From the IMG/VR virus record IMGVR_UViG_3300033984_000473, positions 168,932 to 232,931 of that record: a stretch of DNA of 64,000 nt, one strand, 5' to 3'. Positions 7,061-60,560 of the stretch are shown here, piece by piece; position 1 is the first letter of the stretch; every line of letters starts with the position of its first letter. The notes under the pieces were generated by a model that saw only the letters and a program-made list of their open reading frames with translations, was not told the origin of the DNA and searched no databases. The position numbers and the translations under genes are program-made.

Positions 7061-7180
7061 TGTACAAAGAGTAGGATTCGAACCTACGTAACTCCCTACG
7101 TCATGCTTCCAAACTGAAAAGGAATCGAACCTTACACACGAATTCAAGGGGGAGTGCTTTACCACTAAGCTATCTCCGTA
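7061..7180 (-). ncRNA. tRNA-like RNA with ~53-nt expanded anticodon loop
   Basis: Acceptor, D arm (GCTT AGTGGTA AAGC), CTCCC/GGGAG stem and T arm GTAGG TTCGAAT CCTAC; the loop holds a second T-arm-like hairpin. Confidence 0.6.
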
Positions 7181-11305: not shown

Positions 11306-11380
11306 TGTTGAGGAAGAGGGACTTGAACCCTACTCTACCACCCGTCTAGGTGGTCTTCTAACCAGTTAAAGTATTCCCCA
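11306..11380 (-). ncRNA. degenerate tRNA-like gene with 6-nt anticodon loop
   Basis: Cloverleaf with CCACC-TAGACG-GGTGG; anticodon not assignable. Confidence 0.5.
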
Positions 11381-11467
11381 AAATTACCAGAGGTTGCCAG
11401 ATAGAATTTATAATACCTGTGTTTTCAACCTTTCTCCGTAAATAAAATTACCAGAAGTTACCAGATT

Positions 11468-11588
11468 TGCAGCGGCACCAGGAATCGAACCTAGAACAAT
11501 GGCGTGACAGGCTATATTGAATGCTGAACGTAATCTTCTTAATCAGATTAACTTTTTTAACATTGTTATACCATTTAACTATACCGCT
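11468..11588 (-). ncRNA. tRNA-Asp(GTC)-like RNA with inserted CWGCAA-family module (E2)
   Basis: Normal acceptor, D and T arms, G73; anticodon arm carries AAAAAAGTTAATCT..AAGATTACGTTCAGCA..TATAGC CTGTCAC GC. Confidence 0.7.
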
Positions 11589-11590
11589 AG

Positions 11591-11663
11591 TGGAGCCACG
11601 GAGATTCGAACTCCGTTCTGCTGGGTGCAAGCCAACTATTTTCGCCCAGTAAACTATGACCCC
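11591..11663 (-). tRNA. tRNA-Ala(TGC)
   Basis: Loop CTTGCAC, G3:U70 pair. Confidence 0.93.
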
Positions 11664-11728
11664 AATTTTCTAATTCTACGCTTACAATATGTAGTTCTAT
11701 GAATTAGTAACAGTCTCATCTGTAACTA

Positions 11729-12400
11729 TTATTCTCTACCTTGAAACCATCCTTGTAATAGGTAATTTTCAAGTTCTTCTTTTTTAATCTTTTTGTTAAT
11801 ACTATCTTTGGTTATCCAACATGTACCATATTGGCTATTTGTCTTACCAGTTCCAGTACCCTTTTTCTTTTCAGACATCAATTTTTTAGTTTCTTCTGAA
11901 TGATTTCTATCATTCCAATCGAACCTTTTTATTTTACCAGTTAACAACATATTTGTCATATGTGTTGAAGCTTTATCTCTATGTATTTTAGCAAATTCTT
12001 CATCATTTTTTAATTTGTCAGCAAAAGCTTTTCCAGCACAAACTGAACGATGTTTTTGTTGTTCATCGCTGATAAAACCACCACTTCCACCACCCATTAA
12101 ATTCATACAGTTTTTATCTGTTATCATTTCTGGTGTGATAGTTTTTATCTCAGCTTCAACCAACAATTCTCTTGTTTCAAAGAACTCTAAAATTTCTTTA
12201 TTGAAATTCTCAATCCCATACTTACGCATTGAAGCTCTTAATCTTCTACCGCTACCTAAGTAACCATCATTTATGTCATTCGTACTATGCATCCCTACAT
12301 AATATCTTCCTGTTACATTACATGTTGTTTTATACAAATAATGTATTGTTTTTTCTTTTCTTGTCATTGTCGTATATCTTTTATTATAAATATACGACAA
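11729..12400 (-). CDS. GIY-YIG homing endonuclease (Seg-like)
   Basis: YLYKTT..YYVGMH..YLGSG motif; inside a tRNA array. Confidence 0.9.
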   Translation of the reverse strand: MSYIYNKRYTTMTRKEKTIHYLYKTTCNVTGRYYVGMHSTNDINDGYLGSGRRLRASMRKYGIENFNKEILEFFETRELLVEAEIKTITPEMITDKNCMNLMGGGSGGFISDEQQKHRSVCAGKAFADKLKNDEEFAKIHRDKASTHMTNMLLTGKIKRFDWNDRNHSEETKKLMSEKKKGTGTGKTNSQYGTCWITKDSINKKIKKEELENYLLQGWFQGRE

Positions 12401-12419
12401 AGTACAAAAAAGTCAAGGG

Positions 12420-12491
12420 CGGTCTATGAGAGAATCGAACTCTCATCTCTACCGTGACAGGGTAGCATCCTAGCCGTTGAACGAATAGACC
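12420..12491 (-). tRNA. tRNA-Asp(GTC)
   Basis: Loop CTGTCAC, G73. Confidence 0.93.
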
Positions 12492-12498
12492 TTATATT

Positions 12499-12572
12499 TG
12501 TAGCCCGTAGGGGAGTTGAACCCCTCTTTCTAGGTTGAAAACCGAGCGTCCTTACCGATAGACGAACGGGCC
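12499..12572 (-). tRNA. tRNA-Glu(TTC)
   Basis: Loop TTTTCAA, cloverleaf. Confidence 0.9.
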
Positions 12573-12578
12573 ATTTTT

Positions 12579-12653
12579 TGCGGAACACACGGGAGTCGAA
12601 CCCGCAATCTCTTAAGTGACAGTCAAGGATGTTACCATCAACACCTCTGTTCC
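12579..12653 (-). tRNA. tRNA-Asp(GTC), second copy
   Basis: Loop CTGTCAC, G73. Confidence 0.88.
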
Positions 12654-12745
12654 AATTTAGAGTTTCTTTCCACTCTCAAGTCAACGATGTCTATTATTTC
12701 CCCTAGTTACTGTGCCGACCATCGCATTTGCACACGTTCTTTAAT

Positions 12746-12820
12746 TGTACTACCAACGGGATTCGAACCCGTGTTTTACCCGTGAAAGGGGCACGTCCTT
12801 ACCGACTAGACGATGGTAGC
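12746..12820 (-). tRNA. tRNA-Glu(TTC), second copy
   Basis: Loop CTTTCAC. Confidence 0.93.
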
Positions 12821-12882
12821 ATAGGTGTCCCGTCACTCGTGCACGAGCCATGGCATTACGGGACCGATGTTTTTCCATATTC

Positions 12883-12957
12883 TGTGGTTCCAGTGGGGCT
12901 CGAACCCACGACACCTAGAGCTTCAATCTAGTGCTCTACCAACTGAGCTACAGAACC
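12883..12957 (-). tRNA. tRNA-Phe(GAA), second copy
   Basis: Loop TTGAAGC. Confidence 0.93.
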
Positions 12958-12973
12958 AATTATTTTATTGCAT

Positions 12974-13003
12974 AAAAAAAGTCTGACTTATTAGGTCAGA
13001 CTT
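12974..13003 (-). terminator. attenuator terminator of tRNA array 1
   Basis: AAGTCTGAC-CTAATAA-GTCAGACTTTTTTT between leader ORF and first tRNA. Confidence 0.85.
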
Positions 13004-13028
13004 ATCATTTTGTTAGATTAACTACTCG

Positions 13029-13118
13029 TTAACTTATGACAGTGTTTGACCTTCCGAAAGAGTAATCCTCTTCGGCTGCGAAAAATGCGATATCAAATAT
13101 GTTAGTTAATGTTCTCAT
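13029..13118 (-). CDS. leader peptide 1, MRTLTNIFDIAFFAAEEDYSFGRSNTVIS
   Basis: F/D/A/E codon block; AGGTCAAAC segment complementary to the terminator 5' arm. Confidence 0.8.
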   Translation of the reverse strand: MRTLTNIFDIAFFAAEEDYSFGRSNTVIS

Positions 13119-13155
13119 AGTTTTTTATTTTTGTGGGTTTCCCCTTTTTGTTTGT

Positions 13156-13197
13156 TTATAAATATACTCTTATTCTTAAAAGTTATACAAAGGTACT
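13156..13197 (-). promoter_or_regulatory. tandem host-type (TACCTTTG) and late-type (TATTTATA) promoter cassette
   Basis: Near-identical cassette also at 15338-15379 and 42678-42718. Confidence 0.75.
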
Positions 13198-13225
13198 ACT
13201 TTTTTTAATACAAGTCAAGTTTTTT

Positions 13226-13543
13226 TTAATCTTTTTTTAATATTTTTTGTAACTTCCTAAGTGTCAGCAGTTCTAATAATACGTCACCATGACATTTTTC
13301 TGGCTTACAGAAGCAACCTAGTGTCTTACCTTCTAATTCATCTAGGGATTCCATCAACTCTGGGCTAGCCAATACATATTCTTTGTACTTAGATAATGCT
13401 TCTTCTTTTGAATCCACTATTTCTTTTGCCAGTGTTGGTCTATCTTTGATTATCGTATAAGGACAACCCCATTTGGAACCTCTACCTATATAAACATCGA
13501 AAGCTTCATCTTTCATGTTAACAATCTTGGTTATATTACTCAT
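13226..13543 (-). CDS. DUF4326-family protein
   Basis: DVYIGRGSKWG..LGCFCKPEKCHGDVL. Confidence 0.85.
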   Translation of the reverse strand: MSNITKIVNMKDEAFDVYIGRGSKWGCPYTIIKDRPTLAKEIVDSKEEALSKYKEYVLASPELMESLDELEGKTLGCFCKPEKCHGDVLLELLTLRKLQKILKKD

Positions 13544-13823
13544 CTTTAAAAATTTTATCTTTAAATCTCCAGTACCAACCTTTTAAGCCACTAGATACTC
13601 TATCATCTTCTTCAGCACAGAAACTTTCAAAAGGTCTTACTTTTAAGTCTAACCATAATTTGCTAGTTGCTACATTCAAACTAGGATATTTTTTAAATGA
13701 ATCATCGTAACGCTCTTCATATTCTTTATAATTAGTAAAAATATGAAAATCATTTCGTAACGCTACTTGTGTTACCATATAATGAATCCAAATCTTATAT
13801 TTATCATCTTCGCTAAACTCCAT
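13536..13823 (-). CDS. hypothetical protein
   Basis: 95-aa ORF with promoter. Confidence 0.65.
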   Translation of the reverse strand: MEFSEDDKYKIWIHYMVTQVALRNDFHIFTNYKEYEERYDDSFKKYPSLNVATSKLWLDLKVRPFESFCAEEDDRVSSGLKGWYWRFKDKIFKDE

Positions 13824-13876
13824 TGTTTATTTTTTTTACAAAGGTACAATTAAAAAATGACAATAGCAAATATATT

Positions 13877-13962
13877 TGTGACCAAGGTGAGACTCGAACT
13901 CACACTCCCTAATGGGAACCAGCTTCTTAGACTGGCGGGTCTACCAATTCCCCCACTCGGCC
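13877..13962 (-). tRNA. tRNA-Leu(AAG)
   Basis: Class II cloverleaf, loop CTAAGAA. Confidence 0.9.
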
Positions 13963-13968
13963 AAATAC

Positions 13969-14048
13969 AAGATAGTTTTGTGGGATTGAACCACTTAGTT
14001 TTGTGTATGAGACAAAATTTTAACCGTTTTGTTTGCAGTAACTATCTT
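13969..14048 (-). ncRNA. CWGCAA-family tRNA mimic with CAT anticodon arm (E3)
   Basis: AAGATAGTT/AACTATCTT stem replaces the acceptor; TTACTGCAA; TTTTGT-CTCATAC-ACAAAA; T arm GTGG TTCAATC CCAC. Confidence 0.7.
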
Positions 14049-14052
14049 TTAG

Positions 14053-14127
14053 TACATCTTGTAGGATTCGAACCTACGACTTCCACCTTGTAAGGATGGC
14101 ACTCTGAACCAACTGAGTTAAAGATGC
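14053..14127 (-). tRNA. tRNA-Val(TAC)
   Basis: Loop CTTACAA. Confidence 0.93.
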
Positions 14128-14131
14128 ATAT

Positions 14132-14214
14132 TGTACCCATGGCGAGAGTCGAACTCGCACCCCTTTCGAGCCTAGTTTCTAAGACTAGTGTGTCTACCAT
14201 TCCACCACACGGGC
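14132..14214 (-). tRNA. tRNA-Leu(TAG)
   Basis: Loop CTTAGAA, variable arm. Confidence 0.93.
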
Positions 14215-14273
14215 AAATTTCGGTCTATAAGGTCAGACCGACAACCAGAGCCTTCTCCCTAGGGAGATGCCAG

Positions 14274-14358
14274 TAGCCGAAGTGGGACTCGAACCCACAC
14301 GCCCATTACTGAGCACTGGATTTTAAGTCCAGCGTGTCTACCATTCCACCATTCGGCC
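14274..14358 (-). tRNA. tRNA-Leu(TAA)
   Basis: Loop CTTAAAA, variable arm. Confidence 0.93.
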
Positions 14359-14368
14359 AAATTATCTT

Positions 14369-14593
14369 CTATTCAGAAGATATCATTTGTTTAGCTTTCC
14401 CTTCATATAAGTCAGCAAGGTTTATTTTTCCTTCAGTGTTGGTCAATCCTTCCAAAAGACCACTAGCTTCCCATTTTTCAATGATTTTAGCTTTTTGATA
14501 TTCACCAACACATCTATGATGCATAAACTTTCTATCATGAATAGCCGCAACTCCTTGGCTATGTTCTCCGCAATGTGCACATGTAAATGTCAT
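14369..14593 (-). CDS. Zn-finger plus capsid-N-terminus-like small protein
   Basis: CxxC..HxxC then IIEKWEASGLLEGL..LADLYE. Confidence 0.6.
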   Translation of the reverse strand: MTFTCAHCGEHSQGVAAIHDRKFMHHRCVGEYQKAKIIEKWEASGLLEGLTNTEGKINLADLYEGKAKQMISSE

Positions 14594-14620
14594 AATTTTT
14601 AGTTTTAATTTTTGTTATTT

Positions 14621-14694
14621 TGTAGGAATAGGGAATTTTGAAATCCCGACCTATTGTATGTAACACAATCGCTCTCCCTCTGAGCTACACTCCT
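14621..14694 (-). tRNA. tRNA-Val(TAC), second divergent copy
   Basis: Loop GTTACAT. Confidence 0.85.
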
Positions 14695-14704
14695 AATTGA
14701 TAGC

Positions 14705-15088
14705 TTATACTACCTTTATAAATTCTCCTTTGTCAATGGCTTTTGAAATCCATCTATTTAAGTCTGAACCTTTCATTTCAGCTTCAAAGGTTGTTGTACC
14801 TAAATCTTCTGATAATTGAATTCCAGGAACAGAATCAAATATTGGTTCTCTATCTTCAACCGTTGCAATTGGAAACTGATATGTTCCAACACTCAATTCT
14901 ACTTTGTAATATAAATTACCACTTACATAATGACTAAATTTAGCCATATTTTTTGACTTATACAAGTCTTTCTTTACTTCGTTTTTATCAAACGCTTTTG
15001 CTTCCATATACATTGTTGTTTTTATTTGTCCAGATGAAGCATAAGTAACAAAAGAACCTATTTCAACTATTTCTTCATTATTTTCCAT
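14705..15088 (-). CDS. hypothetical protein
   Basis: 127-aa ORF. Confidence 0.7.
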   Translation of the reverse strand: MENNEEIVEIGSFVTYASSGQIKTTMYMEAKAFDKNEVKKDLYKSKNMAKFSHYVSGNLYYKVELSVGTYQFPIATVEDREPIFDSVPGIQLSEDLGTTTFEAEMKGSDLNRWISKAIDKGEFIKVV

Positions 15089-15105
15089 CTTTTCTTTTTT
15101 TTTAG

Positions 15106-15177
15106 AGGCACCGACTGGATTCGAACCAGTGTACGAGGTTTTGCAAACCCCTACCTAAACCACTCGGCCACGGTGCC
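15106..15177 (-). tRNA. tRNA-Cys(GCA)
   Basis: Loop TTGCAAA, U73. Confidence 0.93.
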
Positions 15178-15184
15178 ATTAAAT

Positions 15185-15214
15185 AAAAAACCCACCTAAT
15201 TTCTTAGATGGGTT
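15185..15214 (-). terminator. attenuator terminator of tRNA array 2
   Basis: AACCCATCTAA-GAAA-TTAGGTGGGTTTTTT. Confidence 0.85.
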
Positions 15215-15241
15215 CCATTGTTATAGTATTTAATTACTTAC

Positions 15242-15319
15242 TTAACAAGCATAACCCATCCTGTCTGCTACTAGCAAACATAAGACTAAAAGGACTACTA
15301 CGTTGTTAAAATTTTTCAT
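15242..15319 (-). CDS. leader peptide 2, MKNFNNVVVLLVLCLLVADRMGYAC
   Basis: 11 consecutive V/L/C codons; GATGGGTT complementary to the terminator 5' arm. Confidence 0.8.
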   Translation of the reverse strand: MKNFNNVVVLLVLCLLVADRMGYAC

Positions 15320-15443
15320 TGTTATATTTTTTGTTTGTTTATAAATATACTCTTATCTCTAAAAGTTATACAAAGGTACGAAACATTTTTGTAATAGTCA
15401 AGCTTTTTTATGTTTTTTTTTGATATTTATAGTAAAAAAGATT

Positions 15444-16187
15444 ATGAAACTTTATAAACTATACGAAACACTAATGTCCGAGGTTGAAAACCCTTCTTGT
15501 GTTTCTAAATTTGGTCAAGAATTATTTGGTGATGAATTAGGTGGTAAAGAACGCAATACACCGATTGAAAACAATTACTTAGAATTGATTAAAGATTTCA
15601 CTGATAATATGTATGGTGAAGAAACTACAAATCAATTCATCAACGCTCTTACCAATCTTAAAAATTGTATGAGCCAATATCCAGATGTTCTAGTTCCAGA
15701 ATCATCAACAGTTTATAGAGGAACGATGATACCATTGACTTACTTCATCAATAACAAACAACCCATAGATATTCAAGGCCCTAACAATTATACTTACAAA
15801 GCCAATAGTCCAGTTCAAAGTTGGTCAATAAGCTACGAAACAGCTTCTAATTTTGGTTCACATGAAACTCTTAATGAAATTGCTAATCATATTGGTCACG
15901 TAGAAACTTCTAGTAGAGAAGACTTGGCTAGATTATTACAAACACTGGTAAACGAGGATATGCGACTTTCTTTTGTATTTGCTTACAAAACATCACCAGA
16001 TGAATTTATCTTTAAATCAGAAGCTTTTAGCAAACTATCTAAAATGGAACATGAAGTTGAACTTATTAGATTTACCAACAAACCAATCCACGTAACCGCA
16101 TATTTCAACGATAATGAGGACAATCATTTATCCGAAGATTCAATCAATTTAATAAAAGCAATTAATGAAGCTATTTCGTTAAGATAA
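15444..16187 (+). CDS. putative ADP-ribosyltransferase (R-S-E type)
   Basis: VYRG, QSWS and EHEV motifs; TATTTATA upstream. Confidence 0.55.
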   Translation: MKLYKLYETLMSEVENPSCVSKFGQELFGDELGGKERNTPIENNYLELIKDFTDNMYGEETTNQFINALTNLKNCMSQYPDVLVPESSTVYRGTMIPLTYFINNKQPIDIQGPNNYTYKANSPVQSWSISYETASNFGSHETLNEIANHIGHVETSSREDLARLLQTLVNEDMRLSFVFAYKTSPDEFIFKSEAFSKLSKMEHEVELIRFTNKPIHVTAYFNDNEDNHLSEDSINLIKAINEAISLR

Positions 16188-17062: not shown

Positions 17063-18274
17063 TTAAATGTTAGTTGCCGAGATTGGCAAGTTATAGAAAT
17101 CTCTTCTTATTGTTACTAAAAGTGCATCTACTAATCCTGGGTTTACCTTGTTTGGTAAATCAGATTTATCAAATACCTCGTCCATATTTGCTATGGCTTC
17201 ATCGGCCATGACAATCAACCCATCTAAATCAACTTCACCACGTCTAATCTTAAGAAGTTCTTCAGCATCTGGTCGTCTAACGATGATACCTTTACCTTCT
17301 CCGATTTCTGTAGCCATATTGATAAGTCGCATACAATGCATCATGTTCTTACCATCAATCTTTTGACCATGACCTTGAACTTCAACGTATCTGGTTACAT
17401 TTCTTTTATCTAACCATTCTTGGTATTCTTTAAAGTCTTTACAGTGCTCTGAATAACCATCTTTGTTATAAACGATTGTACTGATTGTTTTTTCACCTTT
17501 AGGAATACTAGAAAGACGTAGTTGATTTGAGATACCATAGTTAATGACCCCATCTTCATCTTCATGACCAGTGTTTACAAGTCCTTTATATCCAAGACCC
17601 ATTGGCTTACCAGCATCTTTTAGAACAGCCTTTCTTTGGTTGCGTTCTACTTCTGAAAATTTATCAGAGTGACACATTTCACCAACACTGTCATAAAATA
17701 AAGCATACGTATCCCTAGCGTTAGGTATGTTTACAGCACCTATGAATTTTTCATCGTACTTCCCAGAGTTCCATATTTTCCATGGAATTGATTTCTCACC
17801 TTCAAGTACATAACAGAAATCCAATAGGTCTTTACGAACTACTTTGTCCTGTTCCCAGTTTTGTTTCTTGTTAAGTCCTTTGGCTTTTTTGATTTGCTGT
17901 CTAGCGTAACCACCGAAAGAATCTTTACACGCTTTGGTGATGAAATCTTCCTTGTGAGCAATGATAATGTCAAACAAAGGGTTCTTTGTGACGATACAAT
18001 CTTCTGGACTGTTAAGGAGCTCAAGAACAGTTGGGTTGTTTGTACTCATAAGTTCTAAGAACCTTTTAAGTTCCCAACCCGTCCAATCTTTATTGATATT
18101 CAACTGTTCAACATATCCAGTACCCAAGATATTATCAATAGGCAAGATGTAAACGAATTTTTTATCCACATCAGACGTTGGTGTCTGCGTACCATAGGCT
18201 TGACTACCAATAATGCATTCAAAAAGAATCAATCCATTCTCTTTAAGGTAATCGTATGTAATTTTCTGTGTCAT
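17063..18274 (-). CDS. Pol-beta superfamily nucleotidyltransferase (YcgL/RlaP-like)
   Basis: GSQAYG..SDVD, NPTVLE, KNMMHCMRL. Confidence 0.85.
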   Translation of the reverse strand: MTQKITYDYLKENGLILFECIIGSQAYGTQTPTSDVDKKFVYILPIDNILGTGYVEQLNINKDWTGWELKRFLELMSTNNPTVLELLNSPEDCIVTKNPLFDIIIAHKEDFITKACKDSFGGYARQQIKKAKGLNKKQNWEQDKVVRKDLLDFCYVLEGEKSIPWKIWNSGKYDEKFIGAVNIPNARDTYALFYDSVGEMCHSDKFSEVERNQRKAVLKDAGKPMGLGYKGLVNTGHEDEDGVINYGISNQLRLSSIPKGEKTISTIVYNKDGYSEHCKDFKEYQEWLDKRNVTRYVEVQGHGQKIDGKNMMHCMRLINMATEIGEGKGIIVRRPDAEELLKIRRGEVDLDGLIVMADEAIANMDEVFDKSDLPNKVNPGLVDALLVTIRRDFYNLPISATNI

Positions 18275-18357
18275 ATTCTTAATTTTTAACAAAGGTATGT
18301 ATAATTTATTAAACTACCAAACATTTTTACATTTTAATTCCAGTAAGATAGATAAAT

Positions 18358-41316: not shown

Positions 41317-41949
41317 TTATACTCGACCTAATCTCCAATTATCTGGGATTAAATAATCTTTTTTAATCTTTTTATTTTCACTACCATTTGTTACCCATCG
41401 ACTACCAAATTGTGAATTTGTTTCACCAGTTCCAGTACCTTTTTTTACTTTAGACATTATTTGTTTAGATTCTTCACTGTGTGTTTCACCTTCCCAATTT
41501 TTAATCCAATTTTTATCTCTAGTACCATCTAAATATTCTAATGTTCTCGCTGTTGATAATTTATTACTTTTTTTTTCTACCCATTCTGGGTCTTGTCTTA
41601 AAAACTTTTGTTTTTCGTTTGATTTAATCGCATTCAATTTTTGTTGTTCCGAGCTAAACCCACCAGTACCACCTTCTCTAAGGTTCATACATAAATCTTC
41701 TGAAATCAACTCTTTAGTAACAATCTCAATCTCTCTAAGAACTAACTCTTCCCTTGTTGGTAAAAACTCAAGTATTTCTTTTGTATGGTTTTCAATACCA
41801 TGTTTTCTTATTGAATATCTTAATCTTTTACCGCTTCCCATATAACCATCTTCCAGATTATACGCACTATGCATCCCTACATAATACCTTCCCGTTACAT
41901 TACATGTTGTTTTATATATGTAATGTATGTTTCTTTGTTTTCTTGCCAT
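41317..41949 (-). CDS. GIY-YIG homing endonuclease (paralog of 11729-12400)
   Basis: YKTTCNVTGRYYVGMHS shared with the paralog. Confidence 0.9.
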   Translation of the reverse strand: MARKQRNIHYIYKTTCNVTGRYYVGMHSAYNLEDGYMGSGKRLRYSIRKHGIENHTKEILEFLPTREELVLREIEIVTKELISEDLCMNLREGGTGGFSSEQQKLNAIKSNEKQKFLRQDPEWVEKKSNKLSTARTLEYLDGTRDKNWIKNWEGETHSEESKQIMSKVKKGTGTGETNSQFGSRWVTNGSENKKIKKDYLIPDNWRLGRV

Positions 41950-42379: not shown

Positions 42380-42414
42380 AAAAAACCCGACTTAGCTTTT
42401 GACTAGTCGGGTTT
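42380..42414 (-). terminator. attenuator terminator of tRNA array 3
   Basis: AAACCCGACTAG-TCAAAAG-CTAAGTCGGGTTTTTT. Confidence 0.85.
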
Positions 42415-42435
42415 GTTCGTTATATGTGATTACGG

Positions 42436-42537
42436 TTATACTTCCGTACCACCTTCACAATTAAACATACCCGACACTTGGTGACTATTGCGTCTCCAAT
42501 TCGAAATCGATATCATATGTATGTTAATTGTTCTCAT
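42436..42537 (-). CDS. leader peptide 3, MRTINIHMISISNWRRNSHQVSGMFNCEGGTEV
   Basis: 16 consecutive I/N/H/M/S/W/R codons; GTCGGGTATGTT complementary to the terminator 5' arm. Confidence 0.85.
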   Translation of the reverse strand: MRTINIHMISISNWRRNSHQVSGMFNCEGGTEV

Positions 42538-42555
42538 TTTTGTTTTTTTATTTGT

Positions 42556-42666
42556 TTATTTTCTTTTTACTGTTGTTCTTTTTACTTGAACTGTTTTTCT
42601 ACTATTTGTGTTACCTTTTCTTGTTTCGATAACTCTAGTATGTGCTACTCTCTTATGTGTCGCCAT
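42556..42666 (-). CDS. small basic peptide (36 aa)
   Basis: MATHKRVAHTRVIETRKGNTNSRKTVQVKRTTVKRK, between promoter and leader 3. Confidence 0.5.
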   Translation of the reverse strand: MATHKRVAHTRVIETRKGNTNSRKTVQVKRTTVKRK

Positions 42667-42789
42667 TTACTATTTGATTATAAATATGTCGTTATCTTTA
42701 AAAGTTATACAAAGGTACTACATTTATTTTGATTTGTCAAGCTTTTTTTTAATTATTTTTAAAATAATTTATAAATCTTTGATAATCAG

Positions 42790-45368: not shown

Positions 45369-46529
45369 TTATTTGTTTAATAATTGTTTAAAGTTTTCAG
45401 TTTCCATTTGTTGAATCCTTTGACCCAACTCTGGTCCAGGTTTTAAGTCTGTATCCATCATTACTTCTGGTCCCGTAACTGTTAACTGAAACTTTAAGAA
45501 TGCGTCTAATAACTTAGAGTCAATTCCACGCAATTTGCCAAACATTTTAATCTGCTCTGGAGTTACACCAGCGTGCTTCTCAGCTTTTTTAAGTGTTACA
45601 GCTGTATCTACTGATAATTGTAACAAAGCAATTAAAAATGTTATTGCTTTTACTTCTTCTGCTGAGTATTTCAAGTTGTTTAGTTGTTTTCTCAAAGAAT
45701 CTAAGTTGTTTCTTTTCAATATCGTAGCAATTACGATTATTGGGTCGTTATTCTCAACAAAATCCTTATCAACTGCCAATCCATTGAAAACCCAGTCGAA
45801 CAATTTGTAACCATCAATCATTTGTAAGAATTTCTTAACCGATTTTGCCGAAGCAATACCTTTAAGGAATTCATCACGAATTCTCTCACCAGAAATACCC
45901 TCAAGACTAGCATCTTTAACCAACGCAGCGTGTGTATCTGGGTCTAAGTCACTTCCGAACCTTCCAGCAAATCTAATCGCTCTAAGGATACGCAAACGGT
46001 CTTCACCAAATCTATCTTCAGCAGCACCTACAGTTCTTACTATACCTTTTTTAAGGTCATCTACACCACCAACTAGGTCAACTATTTCATGTGTATCAAT
46101 ATCGTAAAACAAAGCGTTAATTGTAAGGTCACGTCTTTTAACATCACCAGCGATATCCGTAAAGCTAACAGCATCTGGTCGTCTACCACCAGACAAATCT
46201 TCACGGAATGTTGCCACTTCGTATTCGCCTTGGTCTGTAAACACATTGATTACACCAAAAGACTTACCTGTTGGTAAAGTTTTCAATCCAGCGTGTTTCA
46301 TCATTTCTTCTACTTTGTCTGGGACAGCATCGGTTGCTAAGTCGTAATCTTTAGGAGTTTTACCTAACAAAGCATCACGCACAGCACCACCTACAACATA
46401 CAACTTAAAACCGTTCGTTTTAAAAACGTCTTTGATTCCTTGTATATCTTCTGGGATTGGAATATCGAATTTGATTCGCTGTTCCATTATCTGCCCTTCT
46501 CTTAGTATTTGTCTAATCTCATTTTTCAT
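45369..46529 (-). CDS. cca: CCA-adding tRNA nucleotidyltransferase
   Basis: VGGAVRD..KDYD, RRDLTINA, EDRLRILRAIRF, ERIRDE. Confidence 0.92.
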   Translation of the reverse strand: MKNEIRQILREGQIMEQRIKFDIPIPEDIQGIKDVFKTNGFKLYVVGGAVRDALLGKTPKDYDLATDAVPDKVEEMMKHAGLKTLPTGKSFGVINVFTDQGEYEVATFREDLSGGRRPDAVSFTDIAGDVKRRDLTINALFYDIDTHEIVDLVGGVDDLKKGIVRTVGAAEDRFGEDRLRILRAIRFAGRFGSDLDPDTHAALVKDASLEGISGERIRDEFLKGIASAKSVKKFLQMIDGYKLFDWVFNGLAVDKDFVENNDPIIVIATILKRNNLDSLRKQLNNLKYSAEEVKAITFLIALLQLSVDTAVTLKKAEKHAGVTPEQIKMFGKLRGIDSKLLDAFLKFQLTVTGPEVMMDTDLKPGPELGQRIQQMETENFKQLLNK

Positions 46530-48525: not shown

Positions 48526-48771
48526 TTAAGGATAAATCCTTGCTATCTTATCTATAATTTGTAATTTACCTTTGAACTTCAACGAACCTTTGGTGTGTGG
48601 ATTGTCTGGTGTTTCTTTTGTTGAAAAGCTTATTCCAGTTTCCATATCAACGTGGTCTACATAATGGGTTTCACCCTTGGCTTTGATTACCCACATTGGA
48701 ATTGTAGGGTCTTGCAAGTGCATCTTATTAAAATGTAAAATGATTTCGGTTCTTTTATCGATATTAAGCAT
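48526..48771 (-). CDS. hypothetical protein
   Basis: 81 aa; start overlaps the Pth2-like stop. Confidence 0.7.
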   Translation of the reverse strand: MLNIDKRTEIILHFNKMHLQDPTIPMWVIKAKGETHYVDHVDMETGISFSTKETPDNPHTKGSLKFKGKLQIIDKIARIYP

Positions 48772-49114
48772 ATTCTAACTCCTTTCCTAATAATGGACAT
48801 GAACTGGTCAATTTACGAGCAGCGTCAGTTGCTTCAAAAGCAATTGCTGTAATTTGATTGTTAATATCTGGTTCACGGAATACTGTGTGCTTGATACCTA
48901 GCAAAATAGCTTTAGATGCTAGTTTGATTAATTCTTGCTCATTGGCAACAGTAAGAAATGCTAAATAATTGGATTTTGTTTGCCATTCTTTTGCTTCAAC
49001 AGCGTGTTCGTGTTGGAAGTCTATGGCAGCATGTCCAGATTGGACTGCTTGGTAAGCGATTGGTAAGTCACGTCTTGTGACAACTCTTAATTTTTGATTG
49101 TTAATCTAATTCAT
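48764..49114 (-). CDS. Pth2-like peptidyl-tRNA hydrolase with in-frame UAG at codon 3
   Basis: MN*INNQKLRVVTRRDLPIAYQAVQSGHAA...FREPDINNQITAIAFE; TAG at 49106-49108; no later in-frame ATG. Confidence 0.8.
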
Positions 49115-49166
49115 CTTGTTTGTTTTTATATAAATATATTAATGTTTATTAAAAAGTAAATCTTTT

Positions 49167-49241
49167 TGTAGTTCTAGTCGGACTCGAACCGACATTTCTC
49201 CGTTTTAGAGGCGGGCGTATTCACGTTAATACTATAGAACC
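49167..49241 (-). tRNA. amber suppressor-type tRNA (CTA)
   Basis: Loop CTCTAAA; anticodon stem has two C-A mismatches; D loop lacks GG; own promoter at ~49252. Confidence 0.75.
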
Positions 49242-49291
49242 TTATTGTTATACAAAGGTATGACAATTTTTTTACCTGTGCAAGTTTTTAT

Positions 49292-52037: not shown

Positions 52038-52046
52038 GTGTTGGTC

Positions 52047-52094
52047 AGAATCAATTTTTTTCCTATATAAAGAGTTAATTGCTGCAATGATTCT
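52047..52094 (-). ncRNA. CWGCAA-family small RNA (E5)
   Basis: AGAATCA-TTGCAGCAA...TGATTCT. Confidence 0.55.
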
Positions 52095-52174
52095 TTTACC
52101 GTTTTTTTAAGACTGTCCAGACTTACAACTCTGCTTTTCAGCTGCCCAAGTTAAATGTCCTGTCTCAATATAGT

Positions 52175-52425
52175 TTATCTCAAAATGGTTGTTTGTTTTT
52201 TTCATCCCAGCGGATTAACCCTTTTTACGTCTTCGGCTTTGCTTTGGCGAGAGTCTACTGTTGTTCGACTACATCCTACTTGCACCTTTTGGGGTGGTTG
52301 ACGTTTGCTTAATTTTTTATACTGGTTAAACTTCCATTTACCATTGAAGAGCGATACTATCACTGTTCGTTTTTGGTTTTCATAGCTGTGTCTGTTTTTG
52401 TTGCAGAACCCATTTTTCTAGATAA
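52175..52425 (-). ncRNA. CWGCAA-family RNA, large (E6)
   Basis: TTATCT..AAAATGG-GTTCTGCAAC...CCATTTTG AGATAA; directly after a TATCTTTG promoter. Confidence 0.55.
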
Positions 52426-52537
52426 TGTAAGAACGTTTTCAAATAAATATACACAAAGATACTAAATATTTATCTCCGTGTCAAGTTTTTTTTCATTTAT
52501 TTTTAAGAAATTTTAAAAACCCAGTAAATACAGGGCC

Positions 52538-59123: not shown

Positions 59124-60560
59124 TTACGAAGTTACGCTAGCGTAACGTTCAGAATCGATAACACTCATCATCATAGAGTATGGAGTCATGTCTTTACCAC
59201 CTAACAAGTTAGTAAGTAAAGCTGGGCTGAATCCAGATACCAACGCAGTACCATTCTTATCGAATTGAACTGGTTTGTTGTTATCACCCCTAGATTGGAT
59301 GTTCCAATATACGACTTTAGGCATTGTGTACCCAGCTTCCGCATACATGTTTTCGAACATCTCTTGAGCCGTTGAATTCCAGTTTCCTCTTGTACCAGAG
59401 TTGAATTCCATATCGGAAAGGATAAGAACCATTGTAGGCATCTCATTCTCAGAAACGTTAGAGTCTTTAGCTTTTTTAAGAATTAACCTAAAAACTGCTT
59501 CGACATCCGTAGACATAGCCCAGTCAGCTCTCGCTAATTGGTTATATCTTTCGTTTAAGCTTCCTTTAAGGATTTGCAACGTAGGGTTGTTAGAGAAAGT
59601 AACAAAAGCATCTTGGAAAGGACCAACATTTCTTTCGGAAATGTATAACCCCAATGAAATTGCTACGTCCATACAAGTCAAGTTAGGATTACTCCCAGCT
59701 GGACAAGACATAGAACCAGAAACGTCAACCACTGGTAAAAATCTTTCAGCACTACCATCAAGATAGTTTGGCAAAGCATTCCATTGTGCGTTAGCACCTT
59801 GAACACTACCTTGTTTAAGATTTTTCACAATGTCGTATGGGTATACGGCACCAGCGTTAATTTTGGTTTCACCTTTTTCGACACTAGCCAAGTATTCTTG
59901 GAATCTAGTTAAGTCATTCTTAGAGAATGCTTTCATAAGGTCGCTCATTGCTTTTGAAGGCAATTTAGAATACTCAATTTTAGTCCATTCTTTAGAACAC
60001 ATCAATTGCTCGACAGTGTTAGAGTTTTCAACTAATAATTTTCTGTACTCTTTTGGTGATAAACCTAAATAGTTTCTTAAAGCGTTTGCTACTCTTTTAT
60101 CCTCACGGTTTGAAACGTTTGGACGTGGCATCCATTTAGCACATAGACCATTTTTAGCATTTAAAGCTTCAGCGATTAAACCGAATGCTTGTTTCTCTAA
60201 TGGTGTTCCCACTAGAACTAAAAGGTCATCCCATCTACCAAATTCTGCAATAAGGTGTAGGTTTTTAGCCAATGTTTCAGTACGATTAGCTGCAAGATAA
60301 GAGATAATATCTTTGAAGATTTGTCTCTCACCAGCACCACCTCTAACGTCACGTGCCCAGAATAATAAACGCATCGCAGTCAATGAGTTTTCAGCGAATG
60401 CTTTCGTAAACGCATTTATTAAACGTTGCTTATCTTGACCTCTCATAGCACCAATTTGGAAGAACAAGTCAACACAATGGTTTAAAGATGAAGAATTAGT
60501 TACCATACCGTTTTCGGTAAGTGAATTTTTTGTTTGCATAGCATTTAATAATGTACTCAT
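59124..60560 (-). CDS. DUF2828 / TROVE-like plus vWA protein (Ro60-like)
   Basis: TENG, ARDVRGGAGER, GRWDD, AKWMPR, vWA MIDAS DVSGSM, ILSDMEF, YWN, VSGFS. Confidence 0.85.
   Translation of the reverse strand: MSTLLNAMQTKNSLTENGMVTNSSSLNHCVDLFFQIGAMRGQDKQRLINAFTKAFAENSLTAMRLLFWARDVRGGAGERQIFKDIISYLAANRTETLAKNLHLIAEFGRWDDLLVLVGTPLEKQAFGLIAEALNAKNGLCAKWMPRPNVSNREDKRVANALRNYLGLSPKEYRKLLVENSNTVEQLMCSKEWTKIEYSKLPSKAMSDLMKAFSKNDLTRFQEYLASVEKGETKINAGAVYPYDIVKNLKQGSVQGANAQWNALPNYLDGSAERFLPVVDVSGSMSCPAGSNPNLTCMDVAISLGLYISERNVGPFQDAFVTFSNNPTLQILKGSLNERYNQLARADWAMSTDVEAVFRLILKKAKDSNVSENEMPTMVLILSDMEFNSGTRGNWNSTAQEMFENMYAEAGYTMPKVVYWNIQSRGDNNKPVQFDKNGTALVSGFSPALLTNLLGGKDMTPYSMMMSVIDSERYASVTS

What the first reader, a model, noticed from the sequence alone, without database searches (positions are those of the whole stretch)
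12974..13118. Attenuator 1: F/D/A/E leader ahead of Phe, Glu, Asp, Glu, Asp, Ala tRNAs
Seen: codons 8-18 are TTT GAT ATC GCA TTT TTC GCA GCC GAA GAG GAT, 10 of 11 matching the array. AGGTCAAAC (13044-13052) pairs 8/9 with the terminator arm GTCTGACCT, and pairing can extend through TGTCAT/ATGATA.
Basis: partly seen in the sequence, partly recalled or inferred. Interest (0 to 1): 0.88.

Follow-up and report, generated by a model that had tools for sequence, protein, structure and literature searches.

The report
Leader-peptide attenuator controlling phage tRNA genes
A large phage of flavobacteria places a tiny gene, made of codons for exactly the amino acids whose tRNAs lie downstream, in front of a switchable terminator, so it probably makes its own tRNAs only when the ribosome runs short of them, a form of control I found no report of for tRNA genes.

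Summary
On the minus strand, a Bacteroidota-type promoter is followed by a 65-nt leader and a 29-codon ORF (13118..13029). Codons 8-18 of that ORF are 10/11 Phe/Asp/Ala/Glu. Next come an intrinsic terminator (13003..12979 plus a T-run) and, 21 nt later, tRNA-Phe, Glu, Asp, Glu, Asp and Ala. The 5' arm of the terminator can instead pair with AGGTCAAAC/TGTCAT at the end of the ORF.

The window holds two more units of the same build: V/L/C leader to Cys/Val/Leu tRNAs, and S/H/W/I/M/N/R leader to those tRNAs. The same phage has a fourth unit (P/Q/Y/T/G/K) outside the window. Together the four cover all 20 amino acids.

About 100 related units in viral and metagenome contigs keep the leader composition:
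- 432/451 core residues in 41 type-1 peptides are F/D/E/A.
- 86% of the downstream tRNAs are Phe/Glu/Asp/Ala.
- Antiterminator pairing co-varies with each unit's own terminator.

Best reading: classical ribosome-mediated attenuation, re-used to sense decoding capacity and feed back on phage tRNA supply. Function is untested. No Rfam family or paper describes it. I rate it a new variant of a known kind, of high interest.

The parts
13182..13218 (-). Promoter of unit 1: TTGAC (13218..13214), then 18 nt, then TACCTTTG (13195..13188, a Bacteroidota -7 element TAnnTTTG) followed by TATAAC. Predicted transcription start is A at 13183.
   Evidence: the 14-nt box occurs 4 times exactly, with 11 matches at up to 2 mismatches against 1.4 expected. 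Consensus and start-site spacing are from PMC6847099. The same 19-mer precedes ordinary genes in Flavobacteriaceae genomes.
13119..13183 (-). A-rich 5' leader of about 65 nt, with A at -3 and no Shine-Dalgarno sequence. It contains a small hairpin, GGGG-AAA-CCC (13144..13135).
   Evidence: A-rich, SD-less initiation in Flavobacteria is described in PMC6847099. Equivalent hairpins with different sequence occur in relatives.
13029..13118 (-). Leader ORF of 29 codons, with ATG at 13118..13116 and TAA at 13031..13029.
   Evidence: The reading frame is kept in 41 distinct relatives, including an in-frame 3-nt insertion. Variable sites by codon position are 2/3/9.
13065..13097 (-). Regulatory codon run, codons 8-18 (F D I A F F A A E E D). 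Phe codon 21 lies at 13058..13056.
   Evidence: In relatives, 432/451 core residues are F/D/E/A.
13055..13074 (-). Hairpin P1 (CGAAGAG / CUCUUUCG) over codons 15-22. It may act as an RNA polymerase pause hairpin (inferred).
   Evidence: It is 92.5% paired in 43 relatives, and 2 of 5 pairs show compensatory changes (helix 1).
13036..13052 (-). Antiterminator 5' arm: AGGTCAAAC (13052..13044) and TGTCAT (13041..13036), which are the last codons of the ORF.
13017..13033 (-). Inner hairpin P2 (GUUAAC / GUUAAU), which contains the stop codon and forms the tip of the antiterminator stem-loop.
   Evidence: An equivalent hairpin across the stop codon is predicted in 8 of the 10 type-1 units folded.
12993..13008 (-). 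Antiterminator 3' arm: ATGATA (13008..13003) and GTCTGACCT (13001..12993). The second piece is also the 5' arm of the terminator.
12972..13003 (-). Intrinsic terminator: a 9-bp stem AAGTCTGAC / GTCAGACTT with a 7-nt loop (13003..12979), and a run of 7 T (12980..12974, the first two of which are the last two bases of the stem).
   Evidence: terminator scan; minimum-energy and centroid fold; -10.9 kcal/mol.
11307..12957 (-). Regulated array. tRNA-Phe(gaa) starts 21 nt after the terminator stem. Then come Glu(ttc), Asp(gtc), Glu(ttc), Asp(gtc), a GIY-YIG-like ORF, Ala(tgc), a 119-nt tRNA-like gene and a tRNA with an 8-nt anticodon loop.
15187..15401 (-). Unit 2, same build. Promoter box 15378..15365; 25-codon leader ORF 15319..15242, with codons 7-17 all V/L/C; arm AGGATGGGTT 15262..15253; terminator 15216..15187. 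The tRNAs Cys, Val, Leu(taa), Leu(tag), Val, Leu(aag) start 11 nt later.
42384..42745 (-). Unit 3, same build. Promoter box 42717..42704; 33-codon leader ORF 42537..42436, with codons 4-19 all in S/H/W/I/M/N/R; arm about 42479..42463; terminator 42414..42384. A 59-codon ORF follows, then tRNAs Ser, His, His, Trp, Ile, Met, Asn x3, Met, Arg, Arg, Ser.

Best explanation
This is a ribosome-mediated (leader-peptide) transcription attenuator that gates a phage tRNA gene array.

Proposed sequence of events:
1. Host RNA polymerase starts at the Bacteroidota-type promoter and transcribes a 65-nt A-rich leader and the 29-codon ORF.
2. A ribosome translates the ORF while the polymerase moves on.
3. If Phe-, Asp-, Ala- and Glu-tRNAs are plentiful, the ribosome runs through codons 8-18 to the stop codon. 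There it sits on or melts AGGUCAAAC/UGUCAU and the hairpin that contains the stop codon. The terminator's 5' arm is then free to pair with its 3' arm, and transcription stops at the T-run, about 15 nt before tRNA-Phe.
4. If decoding of those codons is slow, the ribosome stalls at codons 8-18. Its front edge reaches at most about nt 64-66 of the ORF, just short of the arm that starts at nt 67.
5. The arm then pairs with the terminator's 5' arm as soon as that arm is made, the terminator cannot form, and the polymerase reads into the Phe-Glu-Asp-Glu-Asp-...-Ala array.

The new tRNAs speed up leader translation and shut the unit off again. This makes a negative-feedback 'tRNA-stat'. Three sister units do the same for the other 16 amino acids.

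Shown here:
- the anatomy of the unit;
- the codon/tRNA match;
- mutually exclusive, near-isoenergetic conformers;
- conservation and covariation in relatives.

Inferred:
- that the ORF is translated;
- that transcription and translation are coupled in the host;
- the direction of the switch;
- the physiological trigger.
For: Anatomy. Promoter, ORF, terminator and tRNA lie in one line on one strand. tRNA-Phe begins 21 nt after the terminator stem. In 25 of 46 type-1 relatives the gap is 25 nt or less, which leaves no room for a separate promoter.

Codon/tRNA match in the window.
- 10/11 codons match, P about 7e-5.
- The cross-table of three leaders against three arrays is positive only on the diagonal: 11, 11 and 18 residues against 1-4 off the diagonal.
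- At codon level each isoacceptor of units 2 and 3 has its own codon: CTT/TTA/TTG/CTA, TCG/AGT, AGA/CGC.
- Very rare codons are used: CGC 1%, GTC 4%, TCG 5% and GCC 7% of synonymous usage.

Family.
- There are four leader types in about 60 units behind the same promoter box.
- Type 1 was found again, independently of the promoter, in 61 viral stretches. That gives 48 distinct units and 41 distinct peptides. 432/451 core residues are F/D/E/A, and 234/272 downstream tRNAs are Phe/Glu/Asp/Ala.
- Replacements stay inside each array's amino-acid set in 21 of 24 cases, and third codon positions vary most.
- Type-4 leaders change residue order but keep composition.

RNA switch.
- Cognate pairing of leader tail with terminator arm beats permuted partners: -15.5 against -11.2 kcal/mol (0/5000) over all types. 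Within each type 24-53 of 5000 permutations do as well.
- For 47 type-1 units the figures are -10.1 against -8.3 +/- 0.28 (0/10000).
- RNAalifold recovers the antiterminator in types 1, 2 and 4.
- In a model-fitted alignment of 43 type-1 units the outer helix is 96% paired and 4 of 5 pairs show compensatory changes. The whole structure is 88% paired against 21-46% when partners are slid.
- The two conformers differ by only 1.9-3.2 kcal/mol in the window units.
- The stop codon lies inside the antiterminator stem-loop in all four types.

Context. The same phage carries a CCA-adding enzyme, RlaP, a Ro-like protein, PTH2 and more than 40 tRNAs.
Against: - There are no expression data. Translation of the ORF, and coupling of transcription to translation in the (unidentified) flavobacterial host, are assumed.
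- With the full RNA at equilibrium, the terminator conformer is the minimum-energy fold in almost all units, whatever stretch is masked by a model ribosome. The switch must therefore be kinetic, as it is in the trp operon.
- There is no anti-antiterminator (1:2 type) pairing, so an untranslated leader should read through. This differs from the classical model and is untested.
- The match is not perfect. Leader codons ATC (Ile), TAC (Tyr) and TCT (Ser) have no tRNA in this array, and GCC is read only by wobble. Arrays in relatives sometimes hold His, Met, Ser, Val or suppressor tRNAs that are not represented in the leader.
- In about half of the relatives the first tRNA lies 80-900 nt after the terminator, and L004 has a second promoter-like box in between.
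- In types 3 and 4 the stop codon is 25-30 nt beyond the 5' arm, so blocking by a terminating ribosome would be indirect.
- The covariation alignment was fitted to the structure.
Confidence: 0.72

Rival explanations
1. Same RNA switch, opposite or unspecific logic. Leader translation reports general ribosome availability or translation activity, or stalling favours termination, rather than reporting supply of the specific tRNAs. The array would then be expressed when translation is efficient.
For: In types 3 and 4 the 5' arm is exposed again behind a ribosome that has reached the stop codon. A ribosome stalled at the last regulatory codons would cover part of the arm. With no anti-antiterminator, the default state is read-through.
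Against: This reading does not explain why each leader is built from codons of exactly its own array's amino acids, including one codon per isoacceptor and very rare codons. In type 1 the arm starts 12 nt after the last regulatory codon and ends 4 nt before the stop codon, which is the classical geometry for 'stall gives read-through'.
Confidence: 0.12
2. The terminator is constitutive and ends a separate small-peptide gene. The peptide itself is the product (for example a membrane or signalling peptide). The tRNAs would be made by leaky read-through or from other promoters, and the composition match would be coincidental.
For: The type-2 leader looks like a hydrophobic signal or transmembrane segment. 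Some relatives have a long gap or a second promoter-like box before the first tRNA.
Against: There are four independent composition matches, each statistically extreme. Type-4 peptides keep composition but not residue order. The antiterminator co-varies with each terminator. Several relatives change the C-terminal residues so as to keep RNA pairing, for example RMRIV with terminator AATCTCATCC. In most units the terminator directly abuts the first tRNA.
Confidence: 0.05
3. The control is post-transcriptional. Ribosome position on the leader alters processing or stability of the precursor, for example RNase access to the 5' end of the first tRNA, and not transcription termination.
For: The first tRNA lies only 7-21 nt from the hairpin, so the hairpin could affect RNase P or RNase E access. 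tRNA-processing and RNA-repair genes are abundant in the phage.
Against: In the type-1 to type-4 units, and in almost all of the further type-1 units, the hairpin is followed by a T-run of 4-8, the signature of an intrinsic terminator. Processing control needs neither the T-run nor the mutually exclusive antiterminator.
Confidence: 0.06
4. The leader RNA senses tRNA directly, in the manner of a T-box, without translation.
For: The regulated function (tRNA supply) resembles what T-boxes monitor.
Against: No T-box or other Rfam family matches. The sensor is an ORF with conserved ATG, frame and stop, and with 3rd-position variation. It carries 10-18 codons for 3-7 different amino acids instead of one specifier codon.
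Confidence: 0.02

Closest known systems
Leader-peptide attenuators of amino-acid biosynthesis operons (trpL, hisL, pheL, leuL; multi-amino-acid thrL with Thr+Ile and ilvL/ivbL with Ile/Val/Leu). Cited from established knowledge; pheL is covered in PMC3082878.
   Same: A short ORF with a run of regulatory codons lies just upstream of an intrinsic terminator. An antiterminator uses the terminator's 5' arm. The stop codon is placed so that a finishing ribosome blocks the antiterminator. The choice between near-isoenergetic folds is kinetic.
   Different: The regulated genes are tRNAs, not enzymes, so the signal (decoding speed) is restored directly by the product. Each leader reports 3-7 amino acids, and four leaders together cover all 20. 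There is no region 1:2 anti-antiterminator, so an untranslated leader is predicted to read through. The system is phage-borne and sits in a Shine-Dalgarno-less Bacteroidota setting. It matches no Rfam leader family.
pheST (pheM leader) attenuator of E. coli phenylalanyl-tRNA synthetase (established knowledge).
   Same: Attenuation by a Phe-rich leader controls a component of the translation apparatus and responds to the level of Phe-tRNA, not to a biosynthetic end product.
   Different: It controls a synthetase, not tRNA genes, reports a single amino acid, and is a cellular operon.
T-box riboswitches (established knowledge).
   Same: They couple tRNA status to read-through of a terminator through an antiterminator.
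   Different: T-boxes bind uncharged tRNA directly by a specifier codon and the T-box motif and need no translation. Neither feature is present here. T-boxes control synthetase, transport and biosynthesis genes.
tRNA gene arrays of large phages and mycobacterial elements (PMC6409571, PMC5966550, PMC12803027).
   Same: They are dense arrays of many tRNA genes on a mobile or viral genome, discussed as codon-usage compensation or as an anti-defence supply.
   Different: In the titles and abstracts these searches returned (the papers were not read), the arrays are treated as gene content and no upstream sensing element is mentioned. Here each array is subdivided by amino-acid group and gated by its own leader.

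Membership tests
Ribosome-mediated (leader-peptide) transcription attenuator | A short ORF with start and stop codons lies in the transcript between the promoter and the regulated genes. | tested here: met
   ORF 13118..13029 lies between the promoter box 13195..13182 and tRNA-Phe 12957. Frame, ATG and stop are kept in 41 distinct relatives, and 3rd-position variation dominates.
Ribosome-mediated (leader-peptide) transcription attenuator | A run of codons cognate to the regulated function. | tested here: met
   10/11 codons match, P about 7e-5, positive only on the diagonal of the cross-table. In the family 432/451 core residues match. Codon and anticodon were checked.
Ribosome-mediated (leader-peptide) transcription attenuator | An intrinsic terminator lies directly upstream of the regulated genes. 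| tested here: met
   A 9-bp stem plus a T-run of 7 lies at 13003..12972, 21 nt before the first tRNA.
Ribosome-mediated (leader-peptide) transcription attenuator | An antiterminator helix that is mutually exclusive with the terminator and conserved by covariation. | tested here: met
   In one search the outer helix is 96% paired and 4 of 5 pairs show compensatory changes (alignment fitted to the structure).
Ribosome-mediated (leader-peptide) transcription attenuator | Geometry: the regulatory codons lie upstream of the antiterminator 5' arm, and the stop codon lies at or inside the antiterminator. | tested here: met
   In type 1 the last regulatory codon ends at nt 54, the arm spans nt 67-83 and the stop codon nt 88-90. 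The stop codon is inside the antiterminator loop in all four types.
Ribosome-mediated (leader-peptide) transcription attenuator | An anti-antiterminator (region 1:2) pairing, as in trp-type four-segment attenuators. | tested here: not met
   Hairpin P1 (13074..13055) is self-contained and shares no bases with the arm. This feature defines the trp subtype and not the class as a whole.
Ribosome-mediated (leader-peptide) transcription attenuator | Termination depends on leader translation and on the supply of charged tRNA. | not testable with these tools
   This needs a reporter assay, an in vitro coupled assay or 3'-end mapping.
Rfam leader families (Thr_leader, His_leader, Leu_leader, Trp_leader, Phe_leader and others) | A score at or above the family's gathering threshold. 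| tested here: not met
   The best leader hit is Thr_leader at 15.6 bits against a threshold of 55. Nothing else comes near its threshold, and only tRNAs pass the gathering scores in the window.
T-box riboswitch | A specifier loop and the conserved T-box antiterminator motif (Rfam T-box model). | tested here: not met
   No hit at E up to 10 in 12960..13260.

The most novel reading that the evidence does not exclude
A virus carries a complete 'decoding-capacity meter'. Four leader peptides partition all 20 amino acids between them. Each gates the phage's own tRNA genes for its group, so the phage replaces only those host tRNAs that become limiting. Host tRNAs could become limiting through host shut-off, a shift in codon demand, or tRNA-cleaving anti-phage defences. 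On this reading tRNA genes, generally regarded as constitutively or growth-rate controlled, can be under amino-acid-specific attenuation. The system would be widespread in large flavobacterial phages (contigs from 20 to 368 kb).
Probability: 0.55. Interest if true: 0.92.

Novelty: new variant of a known kind. Interest (0 to 1): 0.88.

Why it matters
Attenuation by leader peptides is a textbook mechanism, but it is known for genes that make or charge amino acids. Here the regulated product is the tRNA itself, and the carrier is a virus. If this is true, three things follow.

1. It would show that phage tRNA arrays are regulated sensors and effectors, not passive cargo. That bears directly on the open question of why phages carry tRNAs: codon compensation, survival of host tRNA decay, or escape from anticodon-nuclease defences.
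2. It would give a natural set of four orthogonal, multi-amino-acid ribosome-stalling sensors, usable as reporters of tRNA supply in Bacteroidota.
3. It would imply functional transcription-translation coupling in a phylum whose translation initiation is unusual.

The idea can be tested with simple reporters.

Tried and rejected
- GenBank phage search (megablast) with 12000-16000 found only tRNA-sized hits and no related phage.
- The sigma-70 promoter scan was uninformative: 22 sites found against 25 expected. The real promoter is of Bacteroidota type.
- Rfam gave nothing but tRNAs, both at gathering thresholds and at permissive E-values over the element.
- Equilibrium folding with a model ribosome footprint did not flip the minimum-energy fold to the antiterminator in most units. 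I therefore rejected a purely thermodynamic switch in favour of a kinetic one, supported by the near-isoenergetic conformers.
- The MAFFT/RNAalifold run on type-3 pre-terminator RNAs failed to align the 3' arms. Single-sequence folds and duplex tests were used instead.
- ARAGORN intron mode on the two long tRNA-like genes gave uncertain identities, so they are not counted in the array.
- About 40% of the promoter-box hits in metagenomes, and all 15 hits in bacterial genomes, are not tRNA units. Most are ordinary flavobacterial genes such as a pyrF-like gene. They were excluded.
- Six of the 61 type-1 pattern hits were chance matches, five inside long ORFs and one (L172) in a short unrelated ORF without a terminator. 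They were excluded.
- Six literature searches found no description of leader-peptide control of tRNA genes. The library lacks many subscription papers.

Full report
**Setting**

The window is AT-rich (34% G+C). ARAGORN finds 31 tRNA genes and Rfam adds two longer tRNA-like genes, all on the minus strand. They lie among phage genes:
- DNA ligase, polymerase, a CCA-adding enzyme, RlaP and a Ro-like protein;
- GIY-YIG-like endonuclease ORFs inside the arrays.

No related phage exists in the GenBank phage collection. The identical sequence is part of a 232,931-bp IMG/VR contig (loci L002, L011 and L013).

**Check of the observation**

On the minus strand, ORF 13118..13029 encodes 29 residues. The terminator scan finds a 9-bp stem with a 7-nt loop at 13003..12979, followed by a T-run. 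It is also the dominant feature of the minimum-energy and centroid folds.

AGGTCAAAC (13052..13044) pairs in 8 of 9 positions with GTCTGACCT (13001..12993), which is the terminator's 5' arm. TGTCAT (13041..13036) pairs with ATGATA (13008..13003). tRNA-Phe starts at 12957, followed by Glu, Asp, Glu, Asp, an endonuclease-like ORF and Ala.

The composition match has P about 7e-5 per random peptide of this phage's composition. It is the best of 287 small ORFs in the window. The alternative pairing is better than 97% of dinucleotide shuffles.

**What surrounds the ORF**

A box TTGAC-N18-TACCTTTGTATAAC lies 65 nt upstream of the ORF. TACCTTTG fits the Bacteroidota -7 element TAnnTTTG, whose G lies at -5 (PMC6847099), so the predicted start is A at 13183.

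The 14-nt box occurs exactly four times in the window. Three copies lie in front of a leader ORF and tRNA array, and the fourth lies directly in front of a suppressor tRNA. The 19-nt version also precedes ordinary genes in Flavobacteriaceae genomes. It is therefore a host-type promoter, and the host is probably a flavobacterium.

The leader upstream of the ATG is A-rich, has A at -3 and has no Shine-Dalgarno sequence. That is how initiation works in this phylum (PMC6847099).

**Two more units in the window and a fourth in the same phage**

| Unit | Leader ORF | Regulatory codons | tRNAs that follow |
|---|---|---|---|
| 2 | 15319..15242 | codons 7-17 all V, L or C | Cys, Val, Leu(taa), Leu(tag), Val, Leu(aag), starting 11 nt after the terminator |
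| 3 | 42537..42436 | codons 4-19 all from S, H, W, I, M, N, R | Ser, His, His, Trp, Ile, Met, Asn x3, Met, Arg, Arg, Ser |
| 4 | outside the window (L145) | P/Q/Y/T/G/K leader | Pro, Pro, Gln, Tyr, Tyr, Thr, Gly, Gly, His, Lys, Lys |

The four amino-acid sets hold 4, 3, 7 and 6 members, do not overlap, and add up to all 20.

In the cross-table each leader matches only its own array.

At codon level each isoacceptor has its codon:
- CTT, TTA/TTG and CTA for the three Leu tRNAs;
- TCG and AGT for the two Ser tRNAs;
- AGA and CGC for the two Arg tRNAs.

The leaders also use codons that are very rare in the phage's genes: CGC 1%, GTC 4%, TCG 5% and GCC 7% of synonymous usage. That fits a sensor better than an ordinary gene.

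**Relatives**

Scanning for the promoter box gave 13 viral and 114 metagenome stretches. About 60 of them are promoter-leader-terminator-tRNA units, and they fall into the same four types.

A promoter-independent scan for the type-1 leader found 61 viral stretches on contigs of 5-368 kb. These gave 48 distinct units and 41 distinct peptides:
- 432 of 451 core residues are F/D/E/A;
- 234 of 272 downstream tRNAs are Phe, Glu, Asp or Ala;
- Phe is the first tRNA in 36 of 46 units;
- the first tRNA starts within 25 nt of the terminator in 25 of 46 units.

Evidence that the ORFs evolve as coding sequence:
- Variable sites in the type-1 regulatory run fall 2/3/9 on codon positions 1/2/3.
- The one indel in that run is a whole codon, GAA.
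- 21 of 24 amino-acid replacements across types 1-3 stay within the array's own set.
- Type-4 leaders differ in residue order but keep composition.

This is what selection on codon content, rather than on a peptide's structure, would produce.

**The RNA switch**

All four types share one architecture:
- a small hairpin (P1) lies over the last regulatory codons;
- a long stem-loop follows, whose outer helix joins the end of the ORF to the terminator's 5' arm;
- the interior of that stem-loop contains the stop codon.

Terminator stems differ widely between relatives, and the leader arm changes with them. Examples are AGGAUGAGA with UCUCAUCC, GGUUAAGG with CCUUAACC, UGGUCGA with CUCGACC, and GGUGGUCG with CGACCAC. 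In several cases the price is a changed C-terminal residue of the peptide.

Quantitative tests:
- Cognate leader/terminator duplexes average -15.5 kcal/mol, against -11.2 for permuted partners (0/5000). Within each type 24-53 of 5000 permutations do as well.
- For 47 distinct type-1 units the figures are -10.1 against -8.3 +/- 0.28 (0/10000).
- RNAalifold on RNAs cut before the terminator's 3' arm recovers the antiterminator in types 1, 2 and 4. Compensatory changes appear in 2, 5 and 5 of the predicted pairs respectively.
- A covariance model aligned 43 type-1 units. In that alignment the outer helix is 96% paired and 4 of 5 pairs change on both sides.
- The whole structure is 88% paired, against 21-46% when partners are slid. 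Ten pairs show double-sided changes, against 5.5 +/- 1.1 in shuffles. The caveat is that this alignment was fitted to the structure.
- The terminator and antiterminator conformers differ by only 1.9, 2.1 and 3.2 kcal/mol in the three window units.

**Mechanism**

The geometry of unit 1 is classical. The last regulatory codon ends at nt 54 of the ORF, the arm spans nt 67-83, and the stop codon is nt 88-90.

A ribosome stalled with any of codons 8-18 in its A site reaches at most about nt 64-66. That leaves the arm free to capture the terminator's 5' arm before the 3' arm is made, so transcription reads through. A ribosome that reaches the stop codon covers the arm and melts the inner hairpin, so the terminator forms.

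Because the product of read-through is the set of tRNAs that decode the stalling codons, the circuit is a direct negative feedback on decoding capacity.

Steps that are inferred:
- that the ORF is translated;
- that transcription and translation are coupled;
- the direction of the switch;
- P1 as a pause hairpin;
- the physiological trigger, which could be decay of host tRNA after host shut-off, late-gene codon demand or anticodon-nuclease defences.

The trigger is consistent with the phage's many tRNA-repair and tRNA-processing genes, but it is speculative.

**Points against**

- Equilibrium folding favours the terminator whatever is masked, so the switch must be kinetic.
- No anti-antiterminator exists.
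- Types 3 and 4 place the stop codon 25-30 nt beyond the arm.
- Leader and array do not match perfectly.
- Some relatives have long gaps, or an extra promoter-like box, before the first tRNA.

**Comparison with what is known**

The element works like the leader-peptide attenuators of amino-acid operons, and most like the multi-amino-acid thr and ilv leaders and the pheST leader. It belongs to no described family. Rfam gives nothing near threshold, and there is no T-box.

Six full-text searches found no report of leader-peptide or attenuation control of tRNA genes, in phages or in cells. To judge from the titles and abstracts these searches returned, papers on phage and mycobacterial tRNA arrays treat the arrays as gene content.

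I therefore class it as a new variant of a known kind: a known mechanism with a new target, new sensor design and new carrier.

**Verdict**

| Item | Result |
|---|---|
| Observation | confirmed |
| Function | untested |
| Confidence in the attenuator reading | about 0.7 |
| Interest | 0.88 |

Noticed in passing
window 49260..48769 (-): A fourth exact copy of the promoter box directly drives a suppressor tRNA (anticodon CTA, 49241..49168), with no leader or terminator. The next ORF has a PTH2 peptidyl-tRNA hydrolase domain (Pfam E 8e-7) and carries an in-frame TAG as its third codon. This suggests TAG read-through or recoding in this phage.
   Followed up: partly
window 11470..11588 (-) and 7063..7179 (-): Two Rfam tRNA hits are 117-119 nt long and were missed by default ARAGORN. 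They are tRNA-like genes with 26-46 nt inserts in or near the anticodon arm. ARAGORN intron mode calls them Thr(cgt) and Gln(ttg), but these identities are uncertain.
   Followed up: partly
window 11307..11380 (-); also L001:2880-2953 and L013:12272-12345: A tRNA has an 8-nt anticodon loop (CUAGACGG; ARAGORN reports the anticodon as 'agac', Ser or Val). It is conserved at the end of type-1 arrays in relatives. It may be a Val(GAC)-like or a quadruplet-reading tRNA. The rare GTC codons of the type-2 leader would be its codon.
   Followed up: no
window 11729..12400 (-) and 41317..41949 (-): GIY-YIG (SegE-like) endonuclease-like ORFs are inserted inside the tRNA arrays. The Pfam hits are below the curated cut-off.
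   Followed up: partly
window 42556..42666 (-): A 36-codon, very basic ORF (rich in T/R/K/V) is inserted between the promoter and the type-3 leader. It occurs only in this phage and in near-identical contigs; the other type-3 units lack it.
   Followed up: no
window 52040..52495 (-): A promoter-like box is followed by a 17-codon T/K-rich ORF and then about 330 nt with no Rfam match, just upstream of tRNA-Gln and tRNA-Met. This is an unexplained non-coding stretch.
   Followed up: partly
window 13135..13144 (-) and equivalent sites in L005, L007, L008, L009, L012: A small hairpin lies in the 5' leader about 20 nt before the leader ATG. Its sequence differs between units but its pairing is kept (for example GGGG-AAA-CCC, GAGCATAATGCTC, GAGAGCAATCTC). 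It may be a stabiliser or a processing site.
   Followed up: no
window 45369..46529, 17063..18292, 59124..60560 (all -): The phage carries a cluster of RNA-repair and tRNA-maintenance genes: a CCA-adding enzyme (PolyA_pol head domain), RlaP (an RNA-repair-pathway nucleotidyltransferase) and a Ro/TROVE-like protein (DUF2828/DUF7788).
   Followed up: partly
L145:7852-8120 (-), same phage but outside the window: This is the fourth attenuator unit (P/Q/Y/T/G/K leader). Its promoter box has one mismatch (TGTGTAAC). It is followed 20 nt later by Pro, Pro, Gln, Tyr, Tyr, Thr, Gly, Gly, His, Lys, Lys.
   Followed up: yes
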